This document shows positions 3,110 through 26,214 of a DNA stretch of 64,000 nt, one piece after another; position 1 is the first letter of the stretch; each line of letters starts with the position of its first letter. The DNA comes from Vitrella brassicaformis CCMP3155. Lineage: Eukaryota; Protista; Chromerida. The stretch lies in the NCBI GenBank assembly GCA_001179505.1, contig CDMY01000200.1:62001-126000 (forward strand). The letters run 5' to 3'. Under the pieces are notes generated by a model, which did no database searches, was not told where the DNA came from, and was given only the letters and a program-made list of their open reading frames with translations. The position numbers were made by a program, and so were the translations under genes.

Positions 3110-5492
3110 TCATGTGCGCGGCATCAATCTGAAGGTCTCCCTCCCGTCCCGCCCCTTGTCGACCCACCCCACCGCCCCCCACTCCACCACAGCCACATCC
3201 TTGCTGAAGCCGTTGTCGATCTCCCCCGCCAGCCCCCATTTGGCCGCCTCGTCCAGGATGGCCCGCTGCACCACCTCACGCAACTCCATCTTGCGGCCAC
3301 CCACACCGCCCACTACAAAGCACTGCAGCTGCGGCACACGCACCAGCTGGCCGCCCACATCGGCCGTCCCGCCCACCACCTCCCTGTTGCTGCTGGCCTG
3401 GTACACCGCCGAGCGGACAAAATGCTCCGCTGCCGCACACACACGGCGGGCCATGCCGCTGTGCCGCACACCAATGGCCTCACTGATGGCCTCCTGTGCG
3501 GCATCCATGTCGAAGAGGTATGACGCGATGCGCCAGCCGACGATGGGGGCCTCCTGCGGGCCGACGGCCAGCCGGGGGGTCAGGAGGGCCGCGAGGGAGC
3601 GGTGGGGGGCGAGGGCGGCATTGACGGCCGCCATGACGGGGGGACCCAGCTCGTTGAGCACTGTGGCGTACTCGGTGAGCGCCAGCTGGCGCTGACGGCG
3701 GCGCACCGCCGCATGCTCCGGCAGCACCAGCTGGCGCTGATGGCGGTCCTCCTCTATGGGAATGCTGCTGATGTCGGCCCCCACCCGCAGCAGGCTGCGG
3801 ATGATCAGCTTGTAGTTGGGAATCTCGGCGCGATGCCGCTCCTTGGTGGCTTCGGGTGTGTTGGGGTCCTGAACCTCTCGAGTGCAGCGATCGAGCTCAA
3901 AGGCAGCTGTGTCGAGGGGCGTGTCGCCAGAGTTGTCCCGTCTGTTGATCTGGTCAGCGGGCAGCTTGCGGCAGACGTAGTCGGCCACGTGGGGAGAGCT
4001 CCACAGTGCCGCCGTTTGCAGTGGTGTCCATCCAATGCCATTGGCTGCCGTCATGTCGGCCCCTCTCGCCGTGATGAGGTCCAGGTAGCTGTCGATGAAC
4101 CACTGCGGGTAGTGGCCCCGAGCCACCTAAGCTGCCTGGTGCACCAGGTTGTAGCCATAGCGTTGTTCGGTTGCGAGGGTGGGGTCTCGTTGGATGAGGT
4201 GCCGAAACATCGACATGAGCCGCCGCAGATACTCGGAGGGAGGCGGACGCATGGCATAGGGCAGCTCCATCCGCATGCGTGGGCCTCGTGGGCGCAGGTC
4301 GATGTCGTGACGAAGCATCAGCAGCTCGAAGGCCGTCTGATTGCCGGATGCAATCGCCAACCCAATGGGCGTCCAGAGACTCCCATCGGCCTCCAAATTG
4401 AGGTCGGCGCCTCCGTCGAGGAGTGCGGTCAGGACGGCCGACTGCAGCTCGTCAGACGACCCCTGTGGCAGGGCGACGAAACGGAGGACAGCATGACTGT
4501 CTTCTGCTTGGATGGTCGGGACGGCATAATCCGACTTGTCGTCAATGGCGAGCTGGACCAGCGAGTAGGGAAAGCCAGCCCACTCGCTGCTCTTCTGCCG
4601 CAGTCGAGGCACCACATTCGGGTCGGCGCCCTGCCCGATGAGGTCGGTCACTTGCTGGGGGCTGGTGATGGTACGGCCGATGATGCCCAGTGTCAGCTGC
4701 TTGGTGGGGTCGTCCGTGTCGTGGGGGAATCGAGCCTCGATGTCATCGGGTCCCAAACATCCTAAGTCGTCTGGCACCTCAACCGTGGTGGCCGCCACCA
4801 CAGGATGGCCTGCAACACACACACACAGCCACCACACGGCACACACAGAGAAGGAATGTGTGTGCGGATCACATTCTTTCGCCTCTGTCTGTCTGTCTGT
4901 CTGTCTGGCGCACCGTCCTCCTCATTGTCGTCGTCGTCGTCATCGAAGCCGTCGCCCAGCGGCCCACCGTCGTCATCACTGTCATCCTGCACACCATCCT
5001 GCCACAACAAAGAGAGAGAGTGAGAGTGAGAAACACTGCTGACGCTCGTCGCATGGGGCGGCTGGCGCTGTCAATGAGTGACTCACCGATTCGGATTCGC
5101 TATCAGCTGCCGCCTGTAGACCTTCTCCCTCCTCCTCGGCCATCTCGCCGTCCTCCTCATGCGACAAATCTGAAACGAAGACATTCAAACACATTCGTAA
5201 CCAAAGCGAAAATGAGTGTGCTACTGGTGTGTTGATCAGTCTGTGTGGCGGGCTGTTGACTCACCACTGTCAGCGTCACTGTCGTCTTGCCCGTCTGGCT
5301 GCCCGCCGCCATTGTTGTCCTCCTCAGCCACATCGTCTGCACACACCATCGAAGGCACACACACACACACGTGTGGCGCTGATGCTGTGTGTTTGATGTG
5401 TCACATTCATCTGTGTGTGGCGTACCCGCATCGCCACCGTCACCGTCCGCCATGGCAGCGGAGGCCATGTGGCTGTCGTGACCGTCGGACAT
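3110..5492 (-). pseudogene. Ankyrin-repeat family paralog A1 with an in-frame TAG
   Basis: Acidic micro-exons start with MSDGHDSHMASAAMADG (ATG 5492). The large exon has ankyrin motifs (TPIGLAIASGN, WTPLQTAALWSSPHVADYL, DTPLDTAA). TAG at 4127-4129 sits where paralogs have Ile (AAIQAEGRY / AAINALGHY). Confidence 0.8.
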
Positions 5493-6216
5493 CTCACTCA
5501 AACAGACACCAACAGCTGCACCGACCACACACACAGAGAGGCGACAAGAGATGGGCAGACACCTGCTGGATGTCTTGTGTCGTGTCTGTGCTCGCCCCAC
5601 CTAGCTATGAGTCAAATGGTACAAAGGCACTCAATCAGTCCGCCCCGTCACCAAGGCCGACCTGCAGAACACGACACACAACACACGAAGGCCGCACATC
5701 ACCTGACGACTAGTGGTGAACGAATCGCCGTACCGTCGGATGGCTCTCTCCTGCTAAGCGCCGCGATGATAATTCCCCAGAGAAGGCCTCCAGCGATGGG
5801 AAGGAGGCCCGTCCGTCCAAGAGAAATGTCAGAGTGATAGCCAAACGGATGGGCGGAGGGATGGACGTGACCTCAGTGAGTCCCTCCCTTCGTCATCTTT
5901 CCTTCCCCTTCCTCCTCTCCCTGTGCCTCGTCTGCGAGCTTTTTGATCCGACCGCCGAGAAAGGAGGTGACAAAGAACCCCGTTTGAAGAGATCTATGAC
6001 AGGCAGCACACGAGCAGGCAATCTGGATCGACAAAAGCTGAAAGTGACGGCGAAAAACCGACACGAGCGACCCTGGCCGCGAAGTAACCCAGCCGTCGGT
6101 CGTTTGAGAGGCCATTTTTTGACGTTTTGAGCCTTCCCGCGATACGTTTTGAGCCTTCCCGCGATGGCGCAGCCTCAGCCCGAAGGTATCAATGCGCAGA
6201 CGGCTCGACAGTTACC

Positions 6217-8232
6217 ATGGAAAAGCCGAACGTTGCATGTGCTGCAGGCAAGGCATCTGTGGCCACCGGCGAGTCAGCCACGACCTCTCAGCAGCAGCAG
6301 CCGTCGGGTCCCCTCGCCATGGCAACAGCGGCTGCCGTCGGCATCACGGGCAATGGCAATGGCAACGGCGGACACGAGCCTGACATCAGCTCAGCTGCCG
6401 GCGGATGGATGGATGGATGTCCTCTCTTCCGCGTGTTGTCGTCGCTGCAGTGTCTGCTGGTGAGGGTCGTGTGTACGGGCAGCGGGAGTGGAAACTGATC
6501 ACCCCGTGGCTCAAGGGTGCTGGACACACACACGGCACATCCACCATCCACAGCGAGCCGTGTTTGCAATGGTCCTCCTTGGCTGTGTATGGTCTGTGTG
6601 TGCAGTTGGTGACAAGGTGAGTGTGCTCAACGCCAATCCGCTGTACGTGGAGGCCGAGTGCGTCGAGGGCGACCGCAAGGGCGTCACCGGCAGGTTCATG
6701 TCCAAATGCGTCAACTCCGACAACACATTCGTCGGTACGTCGGCAGCCGCCCAAAGCGCAGAGAGGGGGAGGGAACTATGCAGAGCGGTCTGGTGTGTTG
6801 TGTTGTTGGGTCTGTCAGGTGAGATCGTGATGCCTAGTGGTGGTGGTGACGTTAGTGCTGCTGCTGCTGCGGGTACGAATTTCAATACTCAGACGATAAC
6901 CGACACACACACCTATGAGGCCTCCTCCGTCTCCTCCGTGTTGCAGGTTCGTTCTCGATGGCGTATCCCGGTCCGTCTGTGTCGGCCTACCCCGCCGTGC
7001 AGACCGCACTCAGCCACTACGGCTACTACCCAACGCCATACAACGGAGGAGAGGGTGAGGGGAGCACACCGACACGCTGGACGAGGACGGGTGTACACGT
7101 GTGTCTGCCCCTTTGGCAGGTCCGCGTGTGCCGGGGGCGGGTACCATGGTGCAGGAGGTGATCGTGGAGAGACCCAATGGCGGCGTCATGCAGGGTGAGT
7201 GGGTGGACAGAGGGGCGCGGGAGGAGGGTGGCGGCATCGGGTCATACGTCTGTGTGTCTGTGTGTCTGTCTGTCTGTCTGTTGTGTGTAGGTTTCCGTCC
7301 GATGGTTGGTGACATGCCGAGCTACGCTGCGCCCTTCACAAGCATGCCCGGCTACTTGGCTTACCTGACAGGTACATGGCCCTCCCCCCTCTCCCCTTCC
7401 CCATCCCCGCACACACATGTCCGTGTGCAACGATCCCATCCACCCCCCTGTGTGTGTGTAGATGCTGACGAGAAGGCCAAGGTGATGAGTAAGTTGTTGA
7501 GCGCTACGGCCCCTGCCGACATCAGAGCGGCGGTGCAGGAGTACATCCAGCCCATTCTGCCCGTCGCCTGGGTATCCAAAGTCTGCGCCAACATGGTCAT
7601 CGAATACTGCAAAGCCAAAGTAAGCCGGGATGGCTGGATGGACACAAGAGACCGAGACACATTGCGTGTGTTGGCTTCCCCTTTGTCAGCTGACGTCTGA
7701 GGTGCTGGTGGGTCTGGGGAGCGACCCCGCTCCCCCGGCCAAGGCCATCGCACTCGTGCAGGGGCTCTCCGCCGCCCTGCCGTCGCTCACCGAGACCGCC
7801 CCGCCCCCCGACAGCAACACGCCCCTGGCCATCCTGACAACGCCCGCATTCCACAAGGCCATCGCCGACGTAGACATCGACGCCATCGACGAGAACACAT
7901 ACACAAAGCTGCGGGACCTCCTCATGTCCGAGTACGGAACTAACGAAGAGGTCATTGTGGTCATTATGTCCCTCCCTGTGTGTGCATGTTGTCAATGCAG
8001 TTCTGAGTTGGTCAACACGTCCTACGTGTATCTGCTGGCGCTGGTGTGGGTGGCGGTGATGCTCCTGCGCAAGACCAAGTACACCAACATCCAGCTGCAG
8101 CAGGAGGATCTGGAGCTGTCGACGGACGGCATCGTGGGGGTGGGGCTGGAGGCGTGCTTTGCCCCACTGCCAGTGGGCAGCGGCACGGCCGGCAAGGATG
8201 AGAAGGGCGGAGAGGGGGAGGGGGACAAGTGA
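6217..8232 (+). CDS. Multi-exon gene: SH3-like N-terminal exons, Pro/Tyr-rich linker, helical region and C-terminal TM segment (possibly disrupted)
   Basis: Spliced VSAGEGRVYGQREWKLITPWLK|VGDKVSVLNANPLYVEAECVEGDRKGVTGRFMSKCV resembles an SH3 fold. Phase-compatible exons follow, ending YVYLLALVWVAVMLL...EGDK* at 8232. The first donor, present in copy 2 (TACG|GTAAG), has lost 3 bp here. Confidence 0.6.
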
Positions 8233-8930: not shown

Positions 8931-10612
8931 CTATGCAGCCACCACCTTCTGGCGGACGAGCGCAGCTGTGCGGGGGTACCGCTGATCTGGGCGGCGCTTC
9001 CAAGCGACGGGGGGCTCCGTGGTGCAGATCTTCAGGCTCGAGTCAACGCGGACCAGGAAATCATCGGCCGCCTTGTCCCCACAGAGAATGAGGATCGTCC
9101 CATCCCACTCCATACTTGCGCCGTCGACCGACCACTCGTCCGCTTTGCGGCAGCCCTTCCACTGGCCCCGTGGCTGCCGCATGACGTCTTGGGTGAGCTG
9201 GTACTCCTTGGGAGGTGGAATGATGAGGTCATCTGGGAGCGTGAAGTGGGGGCGCAGACGAAAGTCGAACCCGTTCACGAAATCCCTGTCGATCAAAACG
9301 ACGATGATATCCGTGAAGGAAGAGTACACGTACTCGTCACCTGCAGACAGACAGCAGAAATGGAAAGGATCCATGCGCTCTGCGTAACCTCTCTCGGCTG
9401 CTCACGTTTGGTCGGCGGGTCGGGATCAGTCAAATCGATGCTGACGTAGGTCAGGGGGTCTGTTGACCAGTCGGGCCAGCCCAGATAGTCCTGGCCGTTG
9501 ACACGGCTCAGATCCACACACTGGCGGACACGGTGACTGAATAGCGAGTACTGGCGCACCGCCGGGGGCCGCGTGTCGAAGACCGCCCGGCTGCCCGCCT
9601 GCCGCAGATCGTGTGCCGTGATGGTGATGGGCAGAGAGGGGAGGCGGTGGCTGTTCTTGAGGTAGTAGATGAGCGACACACAGCGGTCCCAGCAGCCGCC
9701 CTCCTCGATGACATACAACACCCGCAACAGATAACCCTCCCTGGTGTCGACCAGCCGCAGCACGTCCACCAGGTCATACCAGATTAGACGGCACATTATG
9801 CCCAGGCAGACCGGCAACAATATGCCGAGATGCCATCTCATGGCGACAATGACCGGCTGAACGGAAGACTCGTCGCTCGGGGGCCACATCCAGGCGATGC
9901 AGATCTCAGAGATGAAAAGCAACGCCAGAGCACAATCGAAGCAGATCACGCCGCCGGACCGCAGAAGGTCAAATGCGTCGCCATACGCCACCGAAAACTG
10001 CCGAAACGCTCGCACGACGAAGGACGCCTCCCCAAGCCATCGGATGGCCACGTCAATCACAAGAAACGGAACCACCCAGGCGAGAAGGTAGAGAAGCCCC
10101 TGGAAATCCGCGGGAACACAGCCAGCTGCTGCACCAGAAACGGTGTCAGGACGACGGCCCAGCTGTGGATGGACATGTAAATGAAGATGAAGACGCGGAA
10201 ACCCACGGCTACTTGAACGAACGAGAGTGGAGACCGCACTGAAGATCGCCGCCATCCACTGCAGCAGAATCTGCAGGACCGTCTCGCACCGCTTCTGGTA
10301 GGTGAGCACTCCACTAAGGCCCTTCTCGCGAATGGCCGCGTCGAGGCGGTGCGTCAGGTTGACCTCGCTGACCAGCTGGCAGCCGACGCTCTTGGACGAG
10401 GCTCGAAGGGCGACGCAGTCATATGCCGTCAGGGAGGCCAGCAGCCGCCTCTCCACATCCTCAGGCAAGCCGACCAACGAGCACGCATCGGCGTCCGTCT
10501 GACGTGCACACACACACCCCCGCAGACCCGATAGACCCAGTGGATGCAGGAGTGGCCATGTGTGAGTGGAGTGCTCTCTTACCATTGGTGCCCCTGCTCC
10601 GCTACTCGTCAT
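8931..10612 (-). CDS. F-box-like multi-pass membrane protein, copy 1 (contains compensating frameshifts)
   Basis: Exons 10612-10583, 10498-9406 and 9340-8931. N-terminal SLVGLPEDVERRLLASLTAYDCVALRASSKS fits the F-box consensus. Several hydrophobic segments follow. Confidence 0.7.
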
Positions 10613-10895
10613 CAGATCCCGCCAGCTCTACTAGATCCTGCACCAAGCACAGCCACATATATATGTGCACGGCGTGCTGGTTGTGTTGTTGTTCTTCGTG
10701 TTACCGTGGGCACTGTGTTTGCGCACCGGCATCTGCCGCGATAGAGGATGAGCCCAGGGATGCAAGTATCAGTGACTGTCCTCCGTTCAATGACCACACT
10801 CGAGAGTCAGATCCGATCAGCTGCGTACGCAATGCGCGTCAGATCCCCTTTTCTGCCCCCATCTCCCTTTCCCCTTCCGCCACGCGGGCTTCGAT

Positions 10896-12607
10896 GGAAC
10901 CCCCGCGAACGCGGGTCGACGAACGGGTACGAGGGGGTAGGGGCCCCCTCGTAACGGAAGGCGATCGGAAAGGGACACCTTACAAAATGTCCGGGATCGA
11001 AAGGTACAAAATAAACCAGTGATCGCCAGTGGCCAGTGGTTGACCCTTAGGGTATCCGTCAAAAGGCGGCTGGGCAGTGTGAGGCGATTTGGCAGCCATT
11101 CCTGAAGATCTGGGGAAGCCGAATGAAGAGGTGCTTGCTCGTGAACGACGATGCTGGCCGAGAAACCGAAAATCGGCTGCACTTGTGTGTGATCTGAAGA
11201 GAGGGCACGGACAGCGAAGGGAGGTGGTGAGTCGGACGACGCAATGTCGCCCCCTCCCCCTTGAATGGGGGAGGGGGCTGCAAAAGGTCAGTATCCATCA
11301 GTCAGGGGTCACAGGCAGAAGAGAGCACGTCGACCACAGACCGATTGAAGGCGATGATGGCCGTCACGCAGCATTCTGGCACGCAGATCTACTCTCTGAG
11401 CACTCCTGTGTCTGCCTGGCAGGTGTGTTGATGTTTCGTTTGGCCGGCCGCATTGCCGCTTTCTCCCTAATTGCACGGTGAGCTGATGGCTGTCATGGAG
11501 GATTCTGGCACACAGATCTAGTCGTCTGAGCGCTCCTGTGTTTGCCTGGCAGGTGTGTCGGTGTTTCGTTTGGCCGCATTGCCGCCTTCTCTACTGCACG
11601 GTGAGCTGATGGCCGTCTCGCAGGATTCCGGCACACAGATCTACTCGTCTGAGCGCTCCTGTGTTTGTCTGGCAGGTGTGTTGGTGTTTCGTTTGGCCGC
11701 ATTGCCGCCTTCTCTACTGCACGGTGAGCTGATGGCCGTCACGCAGGATTCCGGCACATAGATCTAGTCGTCTGAGCGCTCTTATGTTTGCCTGGCAGGT
11801 GTGTTGATGTTTTGTTTGCCGCATTGCCGCCGTCTCTACTGCACGGTGAGCTGATGGCCGTCACGCAGGATTCCGGCACAGAGATCTAGTCGTCTGAGCG
11901 CTCTTTTGTTTGCCTGGCAGGTGTGTTGATGTTTTGTTTGCCGCATTGCCGCCGTCTCTACTGCACGGTGATCGCATGAGCTGATGGCCGCGACGCAGTA
12001 TTCCAGCTTATACACATATGCTCCCACATGTGTGCTCCGGTATGCGGGTCCTCTCGCATTCATGTGTATGCGCCATTGATTCGTGCATCCACAGCATCTG
12101 AGCACAAAGCTCTTGGCGTGTTTTATCGTTAATTAATACGCCGACGGATGGGAATGCAGTGAGTGTCTATACAGCGTACAGGGCATGTCGAGCGGGTCAG
12201 CTATATCTGGGTCAGAAGGATAGAAGTGCGAGAGATGTCTGACTACTGCTAAAAGTCTGTTGGGGCCGGTCCGCCGCTCCTCTCCCTTGCTTGTGTCGCA
12301 CCCTAGCGGTGGGATACCGGTGGTGTAGGATTCATATTGTGTCTTTCTTGGCCGTCCCTCCCTCTATCCCAGTCTGTCTCCCTCCATGCTTCTCTTCACG
12401 CCTCCCTTCCAATCGCCTTTTTGCTACCTGCCACGCCCTGTGCCTGCCTTTTTTTATTATGGTATCGCGAAGTCCCACGCGGCAGGTCTTTTTTGCAGAT
12501 CTGCCACGCTTACGATTAATGATGGGGGGGAGGGGGAAGATTGAGACAAACAGAAGCTGCCGTGTGAACAAACCCCGAAAAGCATGAGAAACCACACGCG
12601 TTCCTCC
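10896..12607. mobile_element. About 1.7-kb non-autonomous insertion with target-site duplication
   Basis: Absent from the paralogous site (21326-21340, gcttcgatcgcctcg). Flanked by TCGAT at 10891-10895 and 12608-12612. Ends are GGAAC (10896) and GTTCC (12600-12604). No transposase ORF. Confidence 0.8.
11355..12000. repeat. Tandem array of about 123-bp units (5 full plus 1 partial)
   Basis: Units begin TGATGGCCGTCACGCAGGATT at about 11355, 11484, 11607, 11730, 11852 and 11982. The units are contiguous, with no unique spacers. Confidence 0.95.
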
Positions 12608-12784: not shown

Positions 12785-13432
12785 ATGGCTATGGACAATT
12801 TCCTCAAGTTCTTCACCTGCCAGGTGTGCCAGGAGATATACATACGAATGCAAGTCGTACGTCGCCCCCTGCGGCCACTCCATCTGCCTCGGCTGCTGCG
12901 CAAGCCTCACGGACAACAAGTGAGTGACCGACATGAAGGACCTGGGTACGCCACTCTCACTCGTCATTGTGCAGGTGCCCGACGTGCCGCGTGGCCCTTC
13001 CGCCCGCGAGAGAGCGCAAGTTTAGCGTGGATCTGCTGAATGCGGCGCTGAGTGTTGAAGGCGTCACGGAGAGGGAGCGGGAGAAGATCGCCGAGGGGGC
13101 GCCGGCCAAGTTCAGGCAGGAGAGCACCGTCATCGCGCTATTCGTCAAGAACCTCAAAGGTGCGGCGGTTGAGAGGGCGGCGTGGCGCCTCAGGTGGCCC
13201 TCTTCCACGTGTGTCCGTGTGTTCAGGTGCAACGATGTGCTTTGACATCCGTCCGTCGGCCACTGTGAGGAAGCTCAAGGAGATGGTGAAGGACCGAGAG
13301 GGCATCGAGATTGCCCACCAGCGGCTGATCTATGCGGGCAAGCAGCTGGACGACAATGACAAGACGCTCAGGGACTACGGCATCCAGAAGAACGACACCG
13401 TGCACCTCGTCCTCCGGCTGAGAGGAGGCTAA
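12785..13432 (+). pseudogene. RING-ubiquitin fusion, copy 1, RING exon frameshifted
   Basis: [17 protein letters not shown] is followed by a net 2-bp loss (TACATACGAA vs TACTCGGACGAA in copy 2) that breaks the RING frame. Exons 2-3 are intact and end HLVLRLRGG*. Confidence 0.85.
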
Positions 13433-14366: not shown

Positions 14367-16727
14367 CTACCGGAATGCGGCCCCCAGCTGCTGCCATGTG
14401 AACTGGCAGTCGGCATCGCCCAGATGGGTGTTGAAGCCCTTGACCACCGCCCCATCCGCCAGCCCCCACTTGGCCGCCTCGTCCAGCCTGGCCCGATGCA
14501 CCACCTCAGGCAGACCCACACGGCCACGTGTGTGCACCGCCTCACGCGGACGGCTGTCGACACCCTCCAGCTCGAAGCACCGCAGCTGCGGCACACGCAC
14601 CACCTGGCCGCCCACATCGGCCGTCCCGCCCACCACCTCCCTGTTGCTGCTGGCCTGGTACACTGCCGACTTGACGAAGCGCTCCGCTGCCGCACACACA
14701 CGGCGGGCCATGTCGCTGTGCCGCACACCGATGGCCTCACTGACGGCCTCCTGGGCGGCATCCATGTCGAAGAGGTATGACGCGATGCGCCAGCCAAAGA
14801 CGGGGGCCTCCTGCGGGCCGACGGCCAGCCGGGGGGTCAGGAGGGCCGCGAGGGAGCGGTGGGGGGCGAGGGCGGCGTTGACGGCCACCATGACGGCAGC
14901 GGGCAGCTCGTTGAGCACCGCCGCATGCTCCGTCAGCACCAGCTGGCGGCCACGGCGGTCCCTTTGTGTGACTGTGGAGATGGTGTTGATGTCGGCCCCC
15001 GCCCGCAGCAGGCTGCGGATGGTGAGCTTGTAGTTGTCGATCTTGGCTCGATACCGCTCCTTGGCCGGCTCTGGTGTGTCCGGGTCCTGGAGCAATTGAG
15101 TGCGGTGGTCGAGCTCGTAGGCAGCCCAGGCGAGGGGCGTGTCGCCAGAGTTGTCCCGTCTGTTGATCTCGGCAGCGGGCAGCTTGCGGCAGAGGTAGTC
15201 GGCCACGTGGGGAGAGCCACACTCTGCCGCCCAGTGCAGTGGCGTCCATCCGTTGCCGTCGGCTGCCGTCATGTCGGCCCCGTTCGCCGTGATGAGATCC
15301 AGGTAGCTGTCGATGAAGCACTGGGGATAGCGCCCTTCCGCTTGTATGGCTGCCCTGTGCACCAGGTTTTTGCCCCAGACGTCTCGTTCGGCAGCGAGGG
15401 TGGGGTCTCGTGTGATGAGTTGCCGATACATCGACAGCAGCAGCTCCAGATACTGCGGGGGAGGCGGACGCATGGCATAGGGCAGCTCCATCACCATGGG
15501 TGCGTCTGGTGGACGTAGGTCGATTCCGTGCCGCGCCGTCAGGATGTCGAATGCCGTCCGGTTGCCATACGCAATCGCCAATTGGAGGGGCGTCTGTTGG
15601 GGATGATCGGCTGCCGCATTGGGGTCGGCTCCTCCGTCGAGGAGTGCGATCAGGACGGCCGATTGCAGCTCGTCAGACGACCACTTTGGCAGGCAGACAA
15701 GACGGTCATCACCCTCATCGGCTTCTGCTTGGATGGTCGGGACGGCATAGTCCGAGTTGTTGTCAATGGCGAGATGGACCAGCGAGTAGCCGTAGACGGC
15801 ACGACGCATGCTGCCCTTCTGCCGCAGTCGAGGCTCCACATGGGGGTCGGCACCCAGCTCGATGAGGTCGGTCGCGTGCTGCGGGGCGGAGATGGTGCGG
15901 CCGATGATGCCCAATGCCAGCTGCTTGGTGACCTCGTTGGTGCCCAGGGGGAATCGAGCCTCGATGTCGTTGGCTCCCACACAGCCGTCAGGCACCTCAA
16001 CCGTGGTGGCCACCAGCACAGGATGGCCTGCAACACACACACACAGCCACCACACGGCACACACAGTGAAGGAATGTGTGTGAGGATCACATCCTCTCGC
16101 GTCTGTCTGTCTGTCTGTCTGGCGTACCGTCCTCCTCATAGCCGTCGTCTTCATCGCTCTCGTTGTCGTCATCGATGCCGTCGTCGTCGTCGCCCAGCGG
16201 CCCACCGTCGTCATCACTGTCGTCCTGTACACCATCCTGCCACAACAAAGGGAAAAAGTGAGAAACACTGCTGACGGTCGTCGCATGGGGCGGCTGTTGC
16301 TGTCAATGAGTGACTCACCGATTCGGATTCGCTATCAGCTGCCGCCTGTAGACCTTCTCCCTCCTCCTCGGCCATCTCGCCGTCCTCCTCCTCACCCAAC
16401 AAATCTGAAACGAAGACATACCAACACATTCGTCAACAAAGCAAAAATGAGTGTGCCACTGGTGTGTTGATGAGTCTGTGTGGCGTGCTGTTGACTCACC
16501 ACTGTCAGCGTCATTGTCGTCTTGCCCGTCTGGCTGCCCGCCGCCGTTGTTATCCTCCTCAGCCACATCGTCTGCACACACAATCGAAGGCACACACACA
16601 CACACGTGTGGCGCTGATGCTGTGTGTTTGATGTGTCACATTCATCTGTGTGTGGCGTACCCGCATCGCCACCGTCACCGTCCGCCATGGCAGCGGAGGC
16701 CATCTGGCTGTCGTGACCTCCAGACAT
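14367..16727 (-). CDS. Ankyrin-repeat family paralog A2 (apparently intact)
   Basis: Acidic micro-exons from ATG 16727. The large exon lies within the uninterrupted ORF 14367-16286, with TPLQLAIAYGN, WTPLHWAAECGSPHVADYL and DTPLAWAA, plus the family C-terminal domain. Confidence 0.85.
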
Positions 16728-17427
16728 CTCACTCAAACAGACACCAACAGCTGCACCAACCACACACACACAGAGAGGCGACAAGAGATGGGCAGACACC
16801 TGCTGCATGTGTCGTGTGTGTGCTCGCCCACCTAGCTATGAGTCAAATGGTACAAAGGCGCTCAATCAGTCCGCCCCGTCACCAAGGCCGACCTGCACAA
16901 CACGACACCGACACACAAAGGCAGCAAGGCACATCACGACTACTGGTGAACGAATCGCCTGAGCGCGTACCGTCGGGTGGCTCTCTCCTGCTAAGCGCCG
17001 CGATGATTAATTCCCCAGCGAAGGCCTCCGGCGACAGAGAGGAAGGAGGCCCGTCCATGAGGAAACGTCAGAGTGATAGCCAAACGGATGGGCGGAGGGA
17101 TGGACGTGACGTCAGGAGTCCCTCTGGGACGGACGTGACGTCAGGGAGTCCCTCGTCTTTCCTCTCCCTTTTCCCTTTCCCTTTTGCCTGTCTGCGAGCT
17201 TATTCGATCAGACCGGTGCGAGAGCGATAAAGGATCCCGTTTGAAAAGATCTGAGACAGGCAGCACACGAGCAGGCAATCCGGACCGACAAAAGCTGAAA
17301 GTGACGGCGAAAAACCGACCCGAGCGACCCTGGCCGAAGCGACCCAGCCGTCCTTCGTCATTTTGGTTCTCGCGATGGCGCAGCCCCAGTCCGAAGGTAT
17401 CAATGCTCAGATGGGTCGACGCTAACC

Positions 17428-17951
17428 ATGGAAAAGCCGACTGTTGCATGTGTTGCAGCCAAGGCATCTGTGGACGCCGGCGAGTCCGCCACGACCTCTC
17501 AGCAGCAGCAGCCGTCGGGTCCCCTCGCCATGGCAACAGCGGCTGCCGTCGGCACCACGGGCAATGGCAATGGCAACGGCCGATACGGTAAGCCTGACAT
17601 CAGCTGCCGGCGGATGGATGGATGGATGGATGGATGTCCTCTCTTCCGCGTGTTGTCTGTCGTTGCTGCAGTGTCTGTTGGTGAGGGTCGTGTGTACGGG
17701 CAGCGGGAGTGGAAACTGATCACCCCGTGGCTCAAGGGTGCTGCACACACACGGCACACCCACCATCCAGAACGAGCCGTGTTTGCAATGGTCCTTGGCT
17801 GCGTGTGGTCTGTGTGTGCAGTTGGTGACAAGGTGAGTGTGCTGAACGCCAATCCGCTGTACGTGGAGGCCGAGTGCGTCGAGGGCGACCGCAAGGGCGT
17901 CACCGGCAAGTTCATGCCCAAATGCGTCAACTTCGACAACACATTCGTCGG
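17428..17951 (+). CDS. SH3-like 5' exons, copy 2 (fused downstream to histone H1 exons)
   Basis: Near-identical to 6217-6730. All donors are intact (TACG|GTAAG, AAGG|GTGCT, GTCG|GTACGT). Confidence 0.6.
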
Positions 17952-18123
17952 TACGTAACACATTCGTCGGTACGTCGAATGTGTTATCGAAAACTAGGAG
18001 GAGGGGGTGAGGTGGACACACCGACGACCTGGATGGGGGACGCCGCATCAGTGCGTGTGCGTGGGAGACATGGGGTATGGCGATGAACGAGGGTGCTCTG
18101 TGCGTGGGTGTGTGCATTTTCAG

Positions 18124-18708
18124 ATGTTGCTGAGGCCGGCGCTGCCCCGAAGGCGAAAGTAGGCAGCACCACAGCACTACACAGCACCCCTCCATGGCCA
18201 TGCACACCACACACCACACACCACCACACCATACGGAGGGAGATCCAGACGATGACCGTCCTGTGCTCCACCCTTCCCTTGTGTGTCATTGTCGTGTGTG
18301 GTGCAGGCCAAGGGGAAGGGCGAGGCCAAGTCTGGTGGTGGCAAGGCGGGTGCTGCCCCGAAGCACCCTTCGTTTGAGGAGATGATCAAGGAGGCCATCG
18401 GCACACTCAAGGACCAGTCAGGCAGCAGCCTGTTCGCCATCAAGAAGTTCATCCAGGCCAAGTACTCCCTCGACGTCGAGGACGCACGCACCAAGCACCA
18501 CCTCAGCCGCTCACTCTATAAGCCAAGAAACTCATCATGGTATGTACAGGGGGAGGGTAGATGATAATGGTGTGGTGGGATGGTGTGGTGTGGTGTGGTG
18601 TGGTGGGTGCATCTCGACGTGTGGCGTGTGTTGGTGTGTTGTGTGCAGATCAAGGCGTCGTACAAGTTGAACATGAACGTGGGCTGCCAAGATTGGCCGC
18701 CGCTGAGG
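18124..18708 (+). pseudogene. Linker histone H1 winged-helix (H15) fragment with a frameshift
   Basis: [36 protein letters not shown]...HLSRSL and a later exon IKASYKL match the H1 globular domain. The linking KKLIM is in a shifted frame, so splicing gives TG|A stop. Confidence 0.8.
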
Positions 18709-19358
18709 GTACGCACGCACCCCACACAAACCACACACCACACCACACCACACCTTCAGTGTGATGTATGTGTAGTCTGACGACATGAGACACTGATCTC
18801 TATCGTATGCATGTGTGGATGGATGGATGGATGGATGTGTGGATGTGTGTGTTTGTCTTCTCCTTTGCCGCCCTGCCTGCCAATCGATTCGCCGTGTCTG
18901 GGCGTCGCCTCTCCGTTCTTGACCCATGCAGAGCGACGCCTCCTGCCTGCCTGCCTTCTATTCCCTGACTGGCTAAGTCGTCCGTGTGTGTGGTTTGGGG
19001 TGTCCGTGTGTGTGCGTGTGTGTGGACCGTTTGCCGACACTTTGGCATGGAGCGACTGGATGGATGGAGTGAGAATTGATTGATGCACACACAGCAAGTC
19101 ACACGAACGAACAAATACCGCAACAGACAGACATGCCCCCACTCCCTGTCTACTCAGCTAGATGAAGATCATCATGCAGATGACTAATGCATGCGCTGCA
19201 GCAATGACTGACTGTCCATCCAAAGGCATCCCGAATCACGCCATACGACAAACACAGACTTAAGTACCAGCACCTTTGTGGCACCACACGTACCCACTCA
19301 CCTGCAGTCACTCCCCCTCCCTCCCTCCCTCCCTGTGTGTATGGCCAGCAGCCGACCC

Positions 19359-21054
19359 CTACGCCGCCACCTTCTGGCGAACGAGCGCAGCTGTCTGGGG
19401 GTACCGCTCATCTGGGCGGCGCTTCCAAGCAACGGGGGGCTCCGTGGTGCAGATCGTCAGGCGCGAGTCAACGCGGACCAGGAAATCATCGGCCGCCTTG
19501 TCCCCACACAGAATGAGGATCGTCCCATCCAACTGCATACTTGCGCCGTCGACCGACCACTCGTCCGCTTTGCGGCAGCCCTTCCACTGGCCCCGTGGCT
19601 GCCGCATGACGTCTCGGGTGAGCTGGTACTGTTTGGGAGGTGGAATGATGAGGTCATCTGGGAGCGTGAAGTGGGGGCGCAGACGAAAGTCGTTCCCGTC
19701 CACGAAATCCCTGTCGATCAAACGGACGATGATATCCGTGAAGGAAGAGTATACGTACTCGTCACCTGCAGACAGACAGCAGACATGGAAAGGATCCATG
19801 CGCTCTGCGTGATCTCTCTCGGCTGCTCTGCTCACGTTTCGTCGGCGGGTCGGATTCGGTCAAATCGATGCTGACGTACGTCAGCGCACCGGTGTCTGTT
19901 GACCGGTCGGGCCAGCCCAGATAGTCCTGGCCGTTGACACGGCTCAGATCCACACACTGGCGGACACGGTGACTGAATAGCGAGTACTGGCGCACCGCCG
20001 GGGGCCGCGTGTCGAATACCGCCCGGCTGCCCGCTCGCTGGAGATCGTGTGCCGTGATGGTGATGGGCAGAGAGGGGAGGCGGCGGCTGTTCTTGAGGTA
20101 GTAGATGAGCGACACACAGCGGTCCCAGCAGCCGCCCTCCTCGATGACGTACAACACCCGCAACAGATAACCCTCCCTGGTGTCGACCAGCCGCAGCACG
20201 TCCACCAGGTCATACCAGATTAGACGGCACATTATGCCCAGGCAGACCGGCGACAACATGCCGAGATGCCATCTCATGGCGACAATGACCGGCTGAACGG
20301 AAGACTCGTCGCTCGGGGGCCAAATCCAGGAGATGCAGATCTCAGAGATGAAAAGCAACGCCAGAGCACAATCGAAGCAGATCACGCCGCCGGACCGCAG
20401 AAGGTCACATGCGTCGCCATACGCCACCCAAAACTGCCGAAACGCTCGCACGACGAAGGACGCCTCCCCAAGCCATCGGATGGCCACGTCAATCACAAGA
20501 AACGGAACCACCCAGGCGAGAAGGTAGAGAAGCCACTGGATGGGCCACTGAATCCACGGGAACACAGCCAGCTGCTGCACCAGAAACGGTGTCAGGACGA
20601 CGGCCCAGCTGTGGATGGACATGTAAATGAAGATGAAGACGCGGAAACCCACGGCTACTTGAACGAGAGTGGAGACCGCACTGAAGATCGCCGCCATCCA
20701 CTGCAACAGAATCTGCAGGACCGTCTCGCACCGCTTCTGGTAGGTGAGCACTCCACTAAGGCCCTTCTCGCGAATGGCCGCGTCGAGGCGGTGCGTCAGG
20801 TTGACCTCGCTGACCAGCTGGCAGCCGACGCTCTTGGACGAGGCTCGAAGGGCGACGCAGTCATATGCCGTCAGGGAGGCCAGCAGCCGCCTCTCCACAT
20901 CCTCAGGCAAGCCGACCAACGAACACGCATCGGCGTCCGTCTGACGTGCACACACATCCCCACGCAGACCCGACAGACCCAGTGGATGCAGGAGTGGCCA
21001 TGTGTGAGTGGAGTGCTCTCTCACCATCGGTGCCCCTGCTCCGCTACTCGTCAT
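19359..21054 (-). CDS. F-box-like multi-pass membrane protein, copy 2 (intact)
   Basis: Same three-exon structure as copy 1. Continuous hydrophobic region VAVGFRVFIFIYMSIHSWAVVLTPFLVQQLAVFPWIQWPIQWLLYLLAWVVPFLVI. Confidence 0.75.
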
Positions 21055-21508: not shown

Positions 21509-22161
21509 ATGGATATGGACAATTTCCTCAAGTTTTTCACGTGCCAGGTGTGCCAAGAGATATACTCGGACGAACGCAAGCCGTACGTCGCCCCCTGCGG
21601 TCACTCCATCTGCCTCGGCTGCTGTGCAAGCCTCACGGACAACAAGTGAGTGACCAACATGAATGGCCTGGGTATACCGCCACTCTCACTCGTCATTGTA
21701 CAGGTGCCCGACGTGCCGCGTGGCCCTCCCATCCGCGAGAGAGCGCAACTTCAGTGTGGATCTGCTGAATGCGGCGCTGAGTGTTGAAGGCGTCACGGAG
21801 AGGGAGCGGGAGAAGATCGCCGAGAGGGTGCTGGCCAAGTTCAGGCAGGAGAGCACCGTCATCGCGCTGTTCGTCAAGAACCTCAAAGGTGCGGCGGTTG
21901 AGAGGGCGGCGTGGCGCCTCAGGTGGCCCTGTTCCACGTGTGTCTGTGTGTTCAGGTGCAACGATGTGCTTTGACATCCGTCCGTCGGCCACTGTGAGGA
22001 AGCTCAAGGAGATGGTGAAGGGCCGAGAGGGCATCGAGATTGCCCACCAGCGGCTGATCTATGCGGGCAAGCAGCTGGACGACAATGACAAGACGCTCAG
22101 GGACTACGGCATCCAGAAGAACGACACCGTGCACCTCGTCCTCCGGCTGAGAGGAGGCTAA
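21509..22161 (+). CDS. C3HC4 RING finger fused to a C-terminal ubiquitin domain ending LRLRGG (intact, 173 aa from ATG 21515)
   Basis: Exons 21515-21645, 21704-21888 and 21956-22161 splice in phase. RING: CQVC-x14[10 protein letters not shown]8-CPTC. Ubl: [10 protein letters not shown]...[10 protein letters not shown]...TLRDYGIQK...HLVLRLRGG*. Confidence 0.92.
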
Positions 22162-23061: not shown

Positions 23062-25444
23062 CTATCCGCTGCTGTGGGCTGGTGTGGGCTGTTGGGTCGC
23101 TGCTGGTGCTGGTGCTGGTGTGGGCTGGTGCAATGCGGCCCCTAGTTGCTGCCATGTGAACTGGCAGTCGGCATCGCCCAGGTGGGTGTTGAAGCCCTTG
23201 ACCACCGCCCCATCCGCCAGCCCCCACTTGGCCGCCTCGTCCATCCTGGCCCGATGCACCACCTCACGCAGACCCACACGACCACGAGTGTGCACCGCCT
23301 CACGCGGACGGCTATCGATACCCTTTAGCTCGAAGCACTGCAGCTGCGGCACACGCACCACCTGGCCGCCCACATCGGCCGTCCCGCCCACCACCTCCCT
23401 GTTGCTGCTGGCCTGGTACACCACCGAGCGGACGAAGTGCTCCGCTGCCGCGCACAGACGGCGGGCCATGTCGCTGTGCCGCACACCGATGGCCTCACTG
23501 ATGGCCTCCTGGGCGGCATCCATGTCGAAGAGGTATGACGCGATGCGCCAGCCGAAGATGGGGGCCTCCTGCGGGCCGACGGCCAGCCGGGGGGTCAGAA
23601 GTGCCGCGAGGGAGCGGTGGGGGGCGAGGGCGGCGTTGACTGCCACCATGACGGGGGGACCCACCTTGTTGAGCACTGTGGCGTACTCGGTCAGCACCAC
23701 CTGGCGGCCACAGCGGTCCCTCTCTGTGGCTGTGGGGATGCTGCTGATGTCGGCCCCCGCCCGCAGCAGGCTGCGGATGGTCAGCTTGAAGTTGTCAATA
23801 TCGGCGCGATACTTCTCCTTGAAGTGCTCGGGTGTGTTGGGGTCCTGCAGGTGTCGGATGCGGCGATCGAGCCATCCGGCAGCCCAGGCGAGGGGCGTCT
23901 GGCCTTGGTTGTCCTGTCTGTTGATCTGGTCAGCGGGCAGCTTGCGGCAGAGGTAGTCGGCCACATGGGGAGAACCGATGAAGGCCGCCTTGTGCAATGG
24001 CGTCTGCCCACCGGCATCGCCTGCCGTAATGTCGGCGCCGTTCGCTGTGATGAGGTCCAGGTAGGCGTTGATGAAGGACGGGGGATGGCGCCCCTTTGAG
24101 TTGATGGCTGCCCAGTGCACCAAATTGAAGGCGCCGTTGTCGTGTTCGGTGGCGAGGGTGGGGTCTCGTCGGGCGAGTCGCTCATACATCGACATGAGCC
24201 GCTGCAGATACTCGGGGGGAGGCAGACGCAGTGGGCGGGGCAGCTTCATCACCATGTGAGCGTCTGCTGCGTACAGGTCGATGCCTTGACGAGCCCTCAG
24301 GATGTCGAAGGCCTTCTGATTGCCGGATGCAATCGCCACTTGGAGGGGCGTCTGTTCGGTCTCGTCGGCTGCCACATTGGGGTCGGCTCCTCCGTTGAGG
24401 AGTGCGCTCAGGACGGCCGACTGCAGCTCGTCAGACGACCAGTGTGGCAGGGCGACGGGACGGGGGACAGCAAAATCGTTTTCGGCTTGGATGGTCCGGA
24501 CGGTGCAGTCCGACTTGTTGTCAATGGCGAGACACAGGGGTGGGTAGCTGTAGACCGCACCACTGCTATCCCTGACCACACCGGTCATGACATCTGGGTC
24601 GGCGCCCTGCTGCCGATGAGGTCGGTCATTTGCCGTGCGTCGGTGAAGCGCCGGCCGATGATCCACCGTGACAGCTCCTTGGTGGCGTCGTTGGTGCCCT
24701 TGAGGAACCAAGCCTCTAGCTCATCGAGTCCGATGTGGCCGTCCGGCACGGGAACAGTGGGATCCGCCAGGCCACTGAGAGGATGACCTGCAACACACAC
24801 ACAGCCACCACACAACGGACAGTGATTCTGCGCGCAGGATCTTTTCTCGCGTCTGTCTGGCGTACCTTCCTCCTCATATTCAATGTAGTCGTCGTCGAAG
24901 TATCCGTCATCGATATCGTCATCTTGGTCGCCATCACCATCCTCGTCCTGCATGCCATCCTGACACACAACAAAGAGGCAGAGGGGCGGAAAATGACTCA
25001 AGGGCCTCCATCGCATGGACCAGTGTTGGTGTCGATGAGTGCCTCACCGATTCGTCTCCATCGGCTGCCTGCGGACCATCATCACCGTCGGCCATCTCAT
25101 TGGCCATCGCGCCCTCCTGCTGCTGCTGGCCGCCTGGACACCAACACACACACCCTCACCGACCTGGCGTGAGTGTGCTGCTGATGTGAGTGCGCGTCGA
25201 ATGGTCTGTGTGGCAGGTCTGATCACTCACCGCTGTCTGAGCCATTGCAATCTGATTCCTCCGCCTGTCCCCTGCCGCTATGCTCCTCCTCAGCCACATC
25301 CTCTGAAGACACACACACACACGTGTGGCGCTGATGCTGTGTGTTTGATGTGTCACATTCATCTGTGTGTGGCGTAAACGCATCGTCACCGTCACCGTCA
25401 GCCATGGCAGCGGAGGCCATGTGGCTGTCGTGACCGTCGGACAT
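23062..25444 (-). pseudogene. Ankyrin-repeat family paralog A3 with a frameshift near 24610
   Basis: The two halves are in different frames (ORF 24585-25016 ends DLIGSRAPTQMS*; ORF 23062-24711 resumes QGADPD). The sequence has +2 bp relative to A1 (ATCGGCAGCAGGGC vs ATCGGGCAGGGC). Confidence 0.75.
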
Positions 25445-26214
25445 CTCACTCAAACAGACACCAACAGCTGCACCGACCACACACACAGAGAGGCGACAAG
25501 AGATGGGCAGACACCTGCTGCATGTGTCGTGTCTGTGCTCGCCCCACCTAGCTATGAGTCAAATGGTACAAAGGCACTCAATCAGTCCGCCCCATCACCA
25601 AGGCCGACCTGCACAACACGACACCGACACACAAAGGCAGCAAGCCACGTCATGACTCGTGGTGAACGAATCGCATCGCACTCACTGCCGGATGAGAGCT
25701 GCTAAGCCGCGCGATGATCAAATTCGCTCGTCAGCCAGAGCAGGCCAGTTCACTGCCGCCAGCCGAGAAATGTCTTAAGAATGATGGCTGAAGTGGATGG
25801 AGGGACTCAACCACTTCTCTGTTTGTCACAGCGGCTCACGGCGAGGGCCTCTAAGCAGCGAAGCTCCGCTCCCTCGTCCGCCTGTTAGGTTAGAGCTGAA
25901 GGAGCCAAACCCATCTCACATGGGGGCCAGAGAAGTCCTTAGATGGCTCCGCCGAAAGATCTAGGCCAAGCACAAGGTGGCGACTTTAAGTCAAGGAGGC
26001 CACAGTTTGCGGTGGTGCGGCGAATCGATGAGTATCTGACACCGATAGAGTCACAGTGCGCCTGTCTGTCCCCTGACTGCACGCACAGCAGCACTACGCT
26101 GCGCATGGCAGCAGCTCACCATCCCGCACCATGCTCTTAGCACACTCACCAGACACCAGACCAGATACCAACCAATGCATCTCACCACACACCACGCCCC
26201 GTTCCGCTGTCTGT

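What the first reader, a model, noticed from the sequence alone, without database searches (positions are those of the whole stretch)
3110..25700. Duplicated four-gene cassette enriched in ubiquitin-ligase parts: a candidate eukaryotic defence or effector island
Seen: the unit ankyrin(-), SH3-like(+), F-box-TM(-), RING-Ub(+) occurs twice in tandem, followed by a third ankyrin gene. A BTB-BTB-Ubl gene and two more ankyrin paralogs lie nearby. Many copies carry stops, frameshifts, insertions or swapped halves, while neighbouring housekeeping genes look intact. Established: F-box and BTB proteins are cullin-RING substrate adaptors, and birth-and-death expansion of such adaptors is typical of host-pathogen conflict. 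Inference: the genes may be a co-inherited functional module for ubiquitin-based recognition and destruction.
Basis: partly seen in the sequence, partly recalled or inferred. Interest (0 to 1): 0.75.

Follow-up and report, generated by a model that had tools for sequence, protein, structure and literature searches.

The report
Duplicated ankyrin / F-box-like / RING-ubiquitin gene block
In the alga Vitrella brassicaformis a block of four genes (ankyrin protein, linker-histone-like protein, membrane F-box-like protein, RING ligase fused to ubiquitin) was recently duplicated in tandem; one copy is intact and the other is decaying, so it looks like ordinary gene-family turnover rather than a proven four-gene ubiquitin machine.

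Summary
The DNA observation holds. On Vitrella brassicaformis scaffold C200 a 9-11 kb unit (A ankyrin -, B +, C -, D +) occurs twice in tandem, followed by a third A.

Domain calls are partly right:
- A is ankyrin plus a constant C-terminal domain with no known relatives.
- D is RING-HC plus ubiquitin, ending LRLRGG-stop.
- C has a sub-threshold F-box-like N-terminus, 4-5 hydrophobic helices and an unassigned alpha/beta domain.
- B shows no detectable SH3. In unit 2 it is a linker-histone (H15) protein.
- The 'BTB' gene gets no Pfam hit.

Unit 2 is intact. Unit 1 is decaying: TAG in A1, an out-of-frame stretch in C1, a 2-bp frameshift in D1's RING, and a 1.7-kb transposon in the C-D promoter.

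A (>=225 loci) and the C domain (>=300 loci) are giant families seen only in Vitrella. The full four-gene order exists only here. Elsewhere there are partial, degraded blocks, and D2 is the only intact RING-Ub gene found.

Best reading: a recent segmental duplication inside a birth-and-death array, not a demonstrated module. A real ubiquitin link exists for C/D only: a 566-bp head-to-head promoter, and distant C-domain paralogues fused to a ubiquitin-like domain. A defence or effector role is untested.

The scan's other notes concern this same scaffold, not other DNA.

The parts
3113..5492 (-). A1, an ankyrin-family gene of unit 1 and a pseudogene. The main exon 3113-4921 is interrupted by an in-frame TAG at 4127-4129. 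The 5' exons lie near 5266-5340 and 5427-5492. It carries the type-2 C-terminal tail.
6250..8232 (+). B1. Its 5' exons (6250-6348, 6450-6515, 6605-6772) are shared with B2. Its 3' half (about 7101-8232) is unrelated to B2 and has no Pfam hit. The same 3' half recurs at C200:142348-143393 (91%).
8934..10501 (-). C1 (gene model P0001, 501 aa): F-box-like N-terminus, hydrophobic helices, C-domain. Exons are 9404-10498 and 8934-9338. A 10-bp deletion near 10104 and a 4-bp insertion near 10215 throw 37 codons out of frame, so one hydrophobic helix is lost.
10896..12607 (.). A dispersed repeat, probably a non-autonomous transposon, inserted in the C1-D1 intergenic promoter. It is flanked by a TCGAT duplication and has internal 122-nt tandem repeats at 11355-12007. 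It is absent from unit 2.
12785..13432 (+). D1, a RING-ubiquitin gene of unit 1 and a pseudogene. A 2-bp deletion near 12840 shifts the frame between the first Cys pair and the C-x-H of the RING. The Ubl exon 13232-13429 is intact.
14370..16727 (-). A2 (gene model P0021, 664 aa, 5 exons), intact. It has an acidic N-terminus, an ankyrin core and a constant C-terminal domain with the type-1 tail.
17375..18973 (+). B2 (gene model P0220, 240 aa, 8 exons). Its beta-rich 5' exons (the 'SH3-like' part, unverified) are joined to an H15 linker-histone domain at 18307-18543.
19362..20943 (-). C2 (gene model P0002, 504 aa, 2 exons), intact. It has an F-box-like three-helix N-terminus (residues about 10-70), 4-5 hydrophobic helices (about 75-250) and an alpha/beta C-domain (256-504).
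21509..22161 (+). D2, an intact RING-HC plus ubiquitin gene in 3 exons (21509-21646, about 21663-21930, about 21961-22158), ending LRLRGG-stop. It is the only intact copy found in the genome. Its start lies 566 bp from the start of C2, on the opposite strand.
23065..25560 (-). A3, the third ankyrin-family gene and a pseudogene (2-bp insertion near 24613). It shares the type-1 tail with A2 and is 95.5% identical to it at the 3' end.
34837..36620 (+). The Ubl exon (36126-36620) is weak (E=0.005) and there is no BTB hit. It is not part of the repeat.
39031..41344 (-). A4 (gene model P0049, 651 aa), an intact ankyrin-family paralogue outside the repeat.
44779..47159 (+). A5, an inverted ankyrin-family paralogue and a pseudogene (7-bp deletion near 46171).

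Best explanation
This is a young tandem segmental duplication inside a large, fast-turning-over array of gene families seen only in Vitrella. It is not a demonstrated four-gene machine.

Likely origin (inferred). The ancestral arrangement was A(-) B(+) C(-) D(+) A(-). The flanking A genes lie in the same orientation, and their 5' and 3' ends are kept 93-99% identical across the whole family. Unequal (non-allelic) homologous recombination between them would duplicate A-B-C-D and leave the observed 'two units plus a third A'.

After the duplication (shown). Unit 2 kept all four genes open. Unit 1 acquired a stop in A1, an out-of-frame stretch in C1, a RING frameshift in D1, a transposon in the C-D promoter, and a different 3' half in B.

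Likely functions (inferred).
- C2 is a membrane-anchored SCF-type substrate-receptor candidate. Its F-box-like N-terminus would dock SKP1, and its novel alpha/beta C-domain would bind the target.
- D2 is a RING E3 that carries its own ubiquitin with a free GG tail. It is probably co-expressed with C2 from a shared 566-bp bidirectional promoter.
- A proteins are cytosolic ankyrin binders. They have a hypervariable, recombining core and a constant docking domain.
- B2 is a chromatin protein (H15) that merely shares a promoter with A2.
For: - Repeat architecture.
- The C-D part is 93-100% identical between units, with dS 0.05-0.07 and omega 0.5-0.7.
- The D-downstream spacer is 92-93% identical. 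A2 and A3 share the type-1 tail and are each other's best match at the 3' end (95.5%). This fits a repeat unit that runs from inside one A to inside the next.
- All A copies, even across scaffolds, share 93-99% identical ends but 75-88% mosaic cores. For A1 vs A2 the core dS is about 0.27.
- Unit-1 lesions and the transposon with its TCGAT duplication. All four unit-2 genes match full-length database gene models or open exons.
- Family sizes: A has 225 candidate loci and 114 proteins, all Vitrella or unnamed metagenome contigs. C has 271-300 candidate loci and 94 representatives.
- Only partial blocks exist elsewhere: C273 (A, B-5', C, C), C200:139-151 kb (A, B, A, C), C164:54-61 kb (C, degraded D, A), C556 (C, A).
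- The middle exon of D is found only in the two window copies.
- Ubiquitin link of the C domain: P0143 (C396:43400-45005), P0138, and loci on C218 and C524 carry the C-domain followed by a Ubl.
Against: - Partial linkage (A-B, B-C, C-D, D-A) does recur on at least five other scaffolds at 70-75% identity. Some selective value of the neighbourhood therefore cannot be excluded.
- The recombination origin is inferred. The A cores are too scrambled to show the expected A1/A3 chimera in A2.
- The pseudogene calls rest on one short-read-era assembly.
- The F-box assignment is sub-threshold, and no SKP1, cullin or E2 partner was examined.
- No expression data could be consulted for these particular copies.
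Confidence: 0.7

Rival explanations
1. One reading: the four genes form a co-inherited functional module for ubiquitin-based recognition and destruction. Ankyrin and F-box-like proteins act as receptors, and RING-Ub acts as ligase and modifier. The module is amplified under host-pathogen or symbiosis conflict.
For: - D is a true RING plus ubiquitin.
- C has recurrent sub-threshold F-box hits and a confident three-helix N-terminus.
- The A-B and C-D pairs are head to head, with 648-bp and 566-bp spacers.
- Partial linkage recurs on other scaffolds.
- C-domain paralogues are fused to Ubl or BTB_2.
- The ankyrin cores are hypervariable, with omega 0.7-1.2.
Against: - B2 is a linker histone.
- The complete order occurs only in this tandem pair.
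- D is degraded or absent in every other block, and D2 is the sole intact copy.
- Unit 1 decays in A, C and D at once.
- Most A and C-family loci lie apart from each other.
- The high dS of the ankyrin cores points to paralogue exchange rather than simple positive selection.
Confidence: 0.15
2. The block is cargo of a mobile element or an integrated large DNA virus. Such elements often carry ankyrin, F-box, BTB, RING and ubiquitin genes.
For: - The domain mix resembles giant-virus and poxvirus host-manipulation genes.
- Partial blocks are dispersed over many scaffolds.
- Two giant-virus F-box proteins appear among non-significant BFVD hits.
Against: - G+C is 56-65% throughout the window, with no boundary at the block.
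- The genes have spliceosomal-type introns and database gene models.
- Ordinary genes flank the block: EMC3 and cyclophilin exons.
- No structural match to viral proteins reaches E<=0.001.
- No terminal repeats bound the unit. The only transposon seen is a small insertion in unit 1.
Confidence: 0.05
3. Assembly artefact: the two units are mis-joined haplotypes or a collapsed or expanded repeat.
For: The scaffold is rich in near-identical repeat ends, which are hard to assemble. Many A copies sit at scaffold ends.
Against: - The units differ by a 1.7-kb transposon, an unrelated 3' half of B, about 5% substitutions in C-D and about 20% in the ankyrin core.
- That is far beyond allelic variation.
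- Similar arrays occur on other scaffolds.
Confidence: 0.03

Closest known systems
Lineage-specific F-box and MATH-BTB adaptor expansions (C. elegans FTH/FBA2 F-box genes, plant F-box families). From my own knowledge of the literature, not checked here.
   Same: An N-terminal F-box-type motif is joined to a variable C-terminal binding domain. There are hundreds of paralogues in clusters, many of them pseudogenes, with tandem duplication and birth-and-death turnover.
   Different: The F-box here is only sub-threshold. The close subfamily has 4-5 hydrophobic helices. The C-terminal domain matches no Pfam family or PDB sequence. No SKP1 binding is shown.
FBXO3-type F-box + SUKH (Smi1/Knr4) substrate receptors (Zhang, Iyer and Aravind 2011, PMC3113570)
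   Same: F-box followed by an alpha+beta binding domain. The language-model search put SMI1/KNR4 families nearest to the C-domain, with a score of 0.83.
   Different: A score of 0.83 is within the chance range. No member gets a Pfam SUKH hit. The paper reports no lineage-specific expansion of SUKH in eukaryotes, whereas this family has hundreds of loci.
Ankyrin proteins with a constant C-terminal ligase-docking box (poxvirus Ank-PRANC, ASB Ank-SOCS box, Legionella AnkB). From my own knowledge.
   Same: Variable ankyrin repeats are followed by a constant C-terminal module, in a multigene family.
   Different: The constant domain of A (about 190 aa) has no detectable similarity to PRANC, F-box, SOCS box or anything else.
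Natural ubiquitin fusion genes and Ubl-RING ligases (UBA52, RPS27A, polyubiquitin, Parkin). From my own knowledge.
   Same: A bona fide ubiquitin fold is encoded in one reading frame with another protein. I44, K48, K63 and the LRLRGG tail are kept.
   Different: Here ubiquitin is at the C-terminus of a RING protein and ends in GG-stop. The whole RING protein could therefore in principle be activated and conjugated. In the known fusions ubiquitin is N-terminal and is cleaved off.
Contingency or variant gene families with conserved ends and recombining cores. A general class, from my own knowledge.
   Same: The ends of A genes are homogenised family-wide (93-99%). The core is mosaic, and its nearest paralogue changes every ~200 bp.
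   Different: The products are intracellular-looking ankyrin proteins of a free-living or coral-associated alga. They have no signal peptide, and no known switching mechanism.

Membership tests
F-box (PF00646 / PF12937), gene C | Profile match above the curated threshold over the ~45-residue motif | tested here: inconclusive
   P0001 and P0002 get no hit at E<=1. Among 97 family members, F-box-like hits 5 (best E=0.0037) and F-box hits 3 (best 0.02). These are the only recurrent weak families, and all are below cut-off. UniRef labels P0002 'F-box domain-containing'.
F-box (PF00646 / PF12937), gene C | Three-helix bundle fold at the N-terminus | tested here: inconclusive
   The AlphaFold model has helices 14-23, 26-35 and 39-59 with pLDDT 90-97. 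Fold searches of the whole 504-residue model were swamped by the long helices, so this part was not tested.
F-box (PF00646 / PF12937), gene C | Binding to SKP1 in an SCF complex | not testable with these tools
   Needs co-IP, two-hybrid or a co-folding run.
RING-HC zinc finger, gene D | C3HC4 ligand spacing and a profile match | tested here: met
   D2 exon 1 alone scores zf-RING_UBOX 29.8 bits against a cut-off of 25.2. The last Cys pair (C-P-x-C) lies in exon 2. In D1 the pattern is broken by a 2-bp deletion.
Ubiquitin (PF00240), gene D | Beta-grasp profile match and a C-terminal di-glycine available for conjugation | tested here: met
   78.5 bits, E=3e-22. Both copies end LRLRGG followed directly by a stop. 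Actual conjugation was not tested.
Ankyrin repeat, gene A | Profile match to Ank repeats | tested here: met
   Ank_2 E=3e-15 and Ank E=1e-12 in A2, and similar values in A3 and A4. PDB profile hits to ankyrins reach E=3e-44.
SH3 / SH3-like, gene B | Profile or sequence match to an SH3-fold family | tested here: not met
   No Pfam hit at E<=10 for P0220, P0221 or the exon frames. The PDB sequence search hits only H1/H5 histones. The fold itself was not modelled.
Linker histone H1/H5 (PF00538), gene B2 | Profile match to the winged-helix globular domain | tested here: met
   E=7e-17 on exon 18256-18561, and E=6e-16 on P0220. PDB H1.2 and H1.4 match at E=0.005.
BTB/POZ, gene at 34837-35991 | Profile match to BTB or BTB_2 | tested here: not met
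   No Pfam hit at E<=1 or at E<=10. Only a by-eye resemblance to the T1/KCTD motif remains.
Co-inherited functional gene module | The same gene set is linked at independent loci, beyond what block duplication gives | tested here: not met
   The full A-B-C-D order occurs only in the tandem pair. Other scaffolds hold partial blocks that share spacer homology, which indicates common descent, and D there is degraded or absent.
Co-inherited functional gene module | Co-expression and physical interaction of the products | not testable with these tools
   No expression data were reachable. MMETSP transcripts exist for other members of the A and C families only.

The most novel reading that the evidence does not exclude
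C and D would be the core of a chromerid-specific ubiquitin pathway. In this reading:
- hundreds of F-box-like receptors carry a previously undescribed, possibly SUKH-like, target-binding domain, and some are membrane-anchored;
- they work with a RING ligase that carries its own conjugatable ubiquitin;
- the recombining ankyrin family supplies a variable intracellular recognition repertoire.

Together these would form an innate-immunity-like or symbiosis-control system in a photosynthetic relative of apicomplexans.
Probability: 0.1. Interest if true: 0.8.

Novelty: new variant of a known kind. Interest (0 to 1): 0.4.

Why it matters
Chromerids are the closest free-living, photosynthetic relatives of apicomplexan parasites, and their large lineage-specific gene families are essentially undescribed. 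This locus exposes three of them at once:
- an ankyrin family of at least 225 loci, with homogenised ends and a recombining core;
- a family of at least 300 loci with an F-box-like head and an unassigned alpha/beta domain that is sometimes fused to ubiquitin-like, BTB or chromatin domains;
- a single intact RING protein that ends in a conjugatable-looking ubiquitin.

If the C and D products do work together, the locus offers an entry point to a new branch of ubiquitin signalling. If not, it is a clean textbook case of duplication followed by decay of one copy.

Tried and rejected
TOOLS THAT WERE CLOSED OR EXHAUSTED
Several cassette-bearing contigs (C887, C571, parts of C164 and C200) were therefore read only through search coordinates.

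SEARCHES THAT GAVE NOTHING USEFUL
- A first AlphaFold run of C with 16 close paralogues was useless (pLDDT 43.7). A 97-sequence alignment gave pLDDT 81.8.
- Foldseek against PDB and BFVD, and VIA-align (wide and second-look), gave only long-helix matches. The folds of the N- and C-terminal domains remain unassigned, not shown to be new.
- PDB profile searches for C and for the constant domain of A found nothing beyond ankyrin repeats.
- The protein atlas gave SMI1/KNR4 at 0.83 for the C-domain, and nothing named for the A domain. I treat these as leads only.

IDEAS CONSIDERED AND DROPPED OR DOWNGRADED
- Ubiquitin genes lying near C-family loci: 5-6 observed. The expectation is 0.8 with the 85 scored loci, but about 3.3 once the family size (>=300) is taken into account. 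Adjacency alone is therefore not significant, and only the fused gene models count.
- No telomere repeats were found in the fetched parts of C200 or C164.
- The literature search found nothing on these Vitrella families.

STEP LEFT OUT: I built no joined (spliced) protein model of D or B1. D was searched exon by exon by reference, so no search or fold of a joined product was done.
Full report
ORGANISM AND SETTING

The window is G000:C200:62001-126000 of a 72.7-Mb, 1064-contig genome of about 60% G+C. Protein searches identify the organism as Vitrella brassicaformis CCMP3155, a chromerid alga.

IS THE REPEAT THERE?

Yes. Self-BLASTN gives these matches:
- 3202-6740 ~ 14429-17956 (83%)
- 8353-10895 ~ 18753-21334 (93%)
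- 12608-16958 ~ 21330-25674 (82%)

There are five copies of a 2.6-kb ankyrin gene: 3128-5742, 14429-16976, 23187-25725, 39046-41594 and, inverted, 44538-47158.

Unit 1 is therefore A1(-) B1(+) C1(-) D1(+), and unit 2 is A2(-) B2(+) C2(-) D2(+), followed by A3(-). The periods are 11.2 kb and 8.8 kb. The difference comes from a 1.7-kb insertion at 10896-12607 and from a different, longer 3' half of B1.

WHAT ARE THE FOUR GENES?

A is ankyrin (Ank_2 E=3e-15). It also has an acidic N-terminus and a constant C-terminal domain of about 190 residues. That domain has no Pfam, PDB-sequence or atlas relative.

D was searched exon by exon; I built no joined model.
- Exon 1 (21509-21646) is a RING: zf-RING_UBOX scores 29.8 bits against a cut-off of 25.2.
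- Exon 2 supplies the last Cys pair and the first strand of ubiquitin.
- Exon 3 is ubiquitin (PF00240 E=3e-22) and ends LRLRGG-stop.

C is represented by gene models P0001 (unit 1) and P0002 (unit 2).
- Neither has a Pfam hit.
- Scanning 97 family members at a loose threshold, the only recurrent weak families are F-box-like (5 members, best E=0.0037) and F-box (3 members).
- With a 97-sequence alignment AlphaFold gives pLDDT 81.8. The model has a confident three-helix N-terminus (residues 10-70), long hydrophobic helices (Kyte-Doolittle segments between 75 and 250) and a confident alpha/beta domain at 256-504.
- Fold searches of the whole model returned only helix matches, so the fold of this domain is unassigned.

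B is not detectably SH3. The unit-2 gene (P0220, 240 aa, 8 exons) joins the shared beta-rich exons to an H15 linker-histone domain (PF00538 E=7e-17). B1 joins the same 5' exons to an unrelated 3' half that recurs at C200:142348-143393.

The nearby 'BTB-BTB-Ubl' gene has a weak Ubl (E=0.005) and no BTB hit, even at E<=10.

STATE OF THE COPIES

Unit 2 is intact. A2, B2 and C2 match full-length gene models exon for exon, and the D2 exons are open.

Unit 1 is broken in three genes:
- A1 has an in-frame TAG at 4127-4129.
- C1 has a 10-bp deletion near 10104 and a 4-bp insertion near 10215. Thirty-seven codons are read out of frame and one hydrophobic helix is lost. Other paralogues agree with C2.
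- D1 has a 2-bp deletion near 12840 inside the RING.

The 1.7-kb insertion in the C1-D1 spacer is a dispersed repeat. It has at least 84 genomic candidates, internal 122-nt tandem repeats, and a TCGAT duplication at its ends.

A3 (2-bp insertion near 24613) and A5 (7-bp deletion near 46171) are also broken. A4 is intact.

HISTORY

- The C-D part and its spacers are 92-100% identical between the units, with dS 0.05-0.07 and omega 0.5-0.7.
- The ankyrin cores are only 76-84% identical, with dS about 0.27.
- A sliding comparison shows that every A copy shares 93-99% identical 5' exons, promoter and 3' constant-domain ends. This holds even for copies on scaffold C164.
- The core, by contrast, is a mosaic whose nearest paralogue changes every ~200 bp.
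- The core divergence therefore reflects exchange among paralogues rather than simple point-mutation selection.
- A2 and A3 share one type of C-terminal tail and are each other's best 3' match. A1, A4 and A5 share another type.

This fits a repeat unit that starts and ends inside A genes. It points to unequal homologous recombination between same-orientation A genes as the duplicating mechanism. That mechanism is an inference.

IS THE LINKAGE MORE THAN LOCAL?

A is a giant family: 225 candidate loci, at least 14 of them on this scaffold, and 114 proteins, all Vitrella or unnamed metagenome contigs. The C-domain family is equally large: 271-300 candidate loci, and 94 representatives at 50% identity among 1.84 billion proteins.

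Close C paralogues (55-75% identity) lie on about ten loci. Partial blocks recur as follows:
- C200:139-151 kb: A, B, A, C
- C273: A, B-5', C, inverted C
- C164:54-61 kb: C, D remnant, A
- C556: C, A
- C891: B, C fragment

Other close C copies stand without A in the parts I could read: C687 and C814.

The 'D' hits next to C on C687 and at C200:150.8 kb are only the shared upstream spacer. The D on C164 is a heavily degraded remnant. The middle exon of D exists only in the two window copies. D2 is thus the only intact RING-Ub gene found.

The complete four-gene order is therefore confined to this tandem pair. What recurs elsewhere looks like descent from the same block, followed by decay.

WHAT SUPPORTS A UBIQUITIN CONNECTION?

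- The start codons of C2 and D2 are 566 bp apart on opposite strands. Those of A2 and B2 are 648 bp apart.
- More telling, distant C-domain paralogues are fused in one gene model to a C-terminal ubiquitin-like domain. These are P0143 at C396:43400-45005, P0138, and similar exon series on C218 and C524.
- One paralogue carries BTB_2 plus TLDc, and two carry SAP plus HMG box.
- Mere adjacency of ubiquitin loci to C-family loci is not significant once the family size is allowed for.
- The atlas placed SMI1/KNR4 (SUKH) families nearest to the C-domain, at 0.83, which is within the chance range. F-box plus SUKH is a known receptor architecture, FBXO3 (PMC3113570). No SUKH profile hit was obtained.

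VERDICT

The birth-and-death description is right.

The four-gene 'module' is not supported:
- one member is a histone-like protein;
- one belongs to a family spread across the genome;
- the ligase member is single-copy;
- one whole unit is decaying.

The defence or effector label is untested. None of the products begins with a signal-like hydrophobic stretch. A C-D functional pair is plausible and worth testing.

Other notes of the scan (RING-Ub, exon shuffling in B, the ankyrin array upstream) concern this same scaffold and agree with what I found. A withheld follow-up overlaps this stretch.

Noticed in passing
window 10896-12607: A 1.7-kb dispersed repeat is inserted in the C1-D1 spacer. 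It is flanked by a TCGAT duplication, contains four to five 122-nt tandem repeats (11355-12007), and has at least 84 candidate copies in the genome. It is probably a non-autonomous transposon.
   Followed up: partly
window 3128-5742, 14429-16976, 23187-25725, 39046-41594, 44538-47158; L010, L014, L016, L021: All ankyrin-family genes keep 93-99% identical 5' exons, promoter and 3' constant-domain ends, even between scaffolds. Their cores are 75-88% mosaics whose nearest paralogue changes every ~200 bp. The pattern is concerted evolution at the ends with a recombining middle.
   Followed up: partly
L029 (C396:41900-45541), L030 (C218:91728-95354); C524:2056-4904: Distant paralogues of the C-domain are followed, in the same gene model, by a C-terminal ubiquitin-like domain that lacks the GG tail (P0143, P0138). 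Others are fused to BTB_2+TLDc (P0158) or SAP+HMG box (P0144, P0145).
   Followed up: partly
protein P0017 (a 331,701-bp contig, not fetched): A C-family gene model ends in the characteristic C-terminal tail of the ankyrin (A) family. This suggests exon exchange between the two neighbouring families, or a fused gene model.
   Followed up: no
window 21509-22161: D2 is the only intact RING plus ubiquitin (LRLRGG-stop) gene found in the genome. D1 is frameshifted, and the copy at C164:56.8-57.4 kb (L037) is reduced to short remnants.
   Followed up: yes
window 36812-37167 and 38479-38853: Two 79%-identical ~360-bp segments lie downstream of the Ubl gene. They are rich in CTGT/GATG-type microsatellites, which also fill many introns in the window.
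   Followed up: no
window 49859-50350 and 59320-59877: Exons of ordinary genes flank the array: EMC3/TMCO1-like (E=1e-16) and a cyclophilin-type isomerase (weak hit on one exon).
   Followed up: no
MMETSP transcript P0007 vs window 8934-9338: The last ~130 residues of this transcript are nearly identical to exon 2 of C1, but its upstream part is only ~55% identical to exon 1 of C1. It is either another paralogue with a converted exon or a chimeric transcript assembly.
   Followed up: partly
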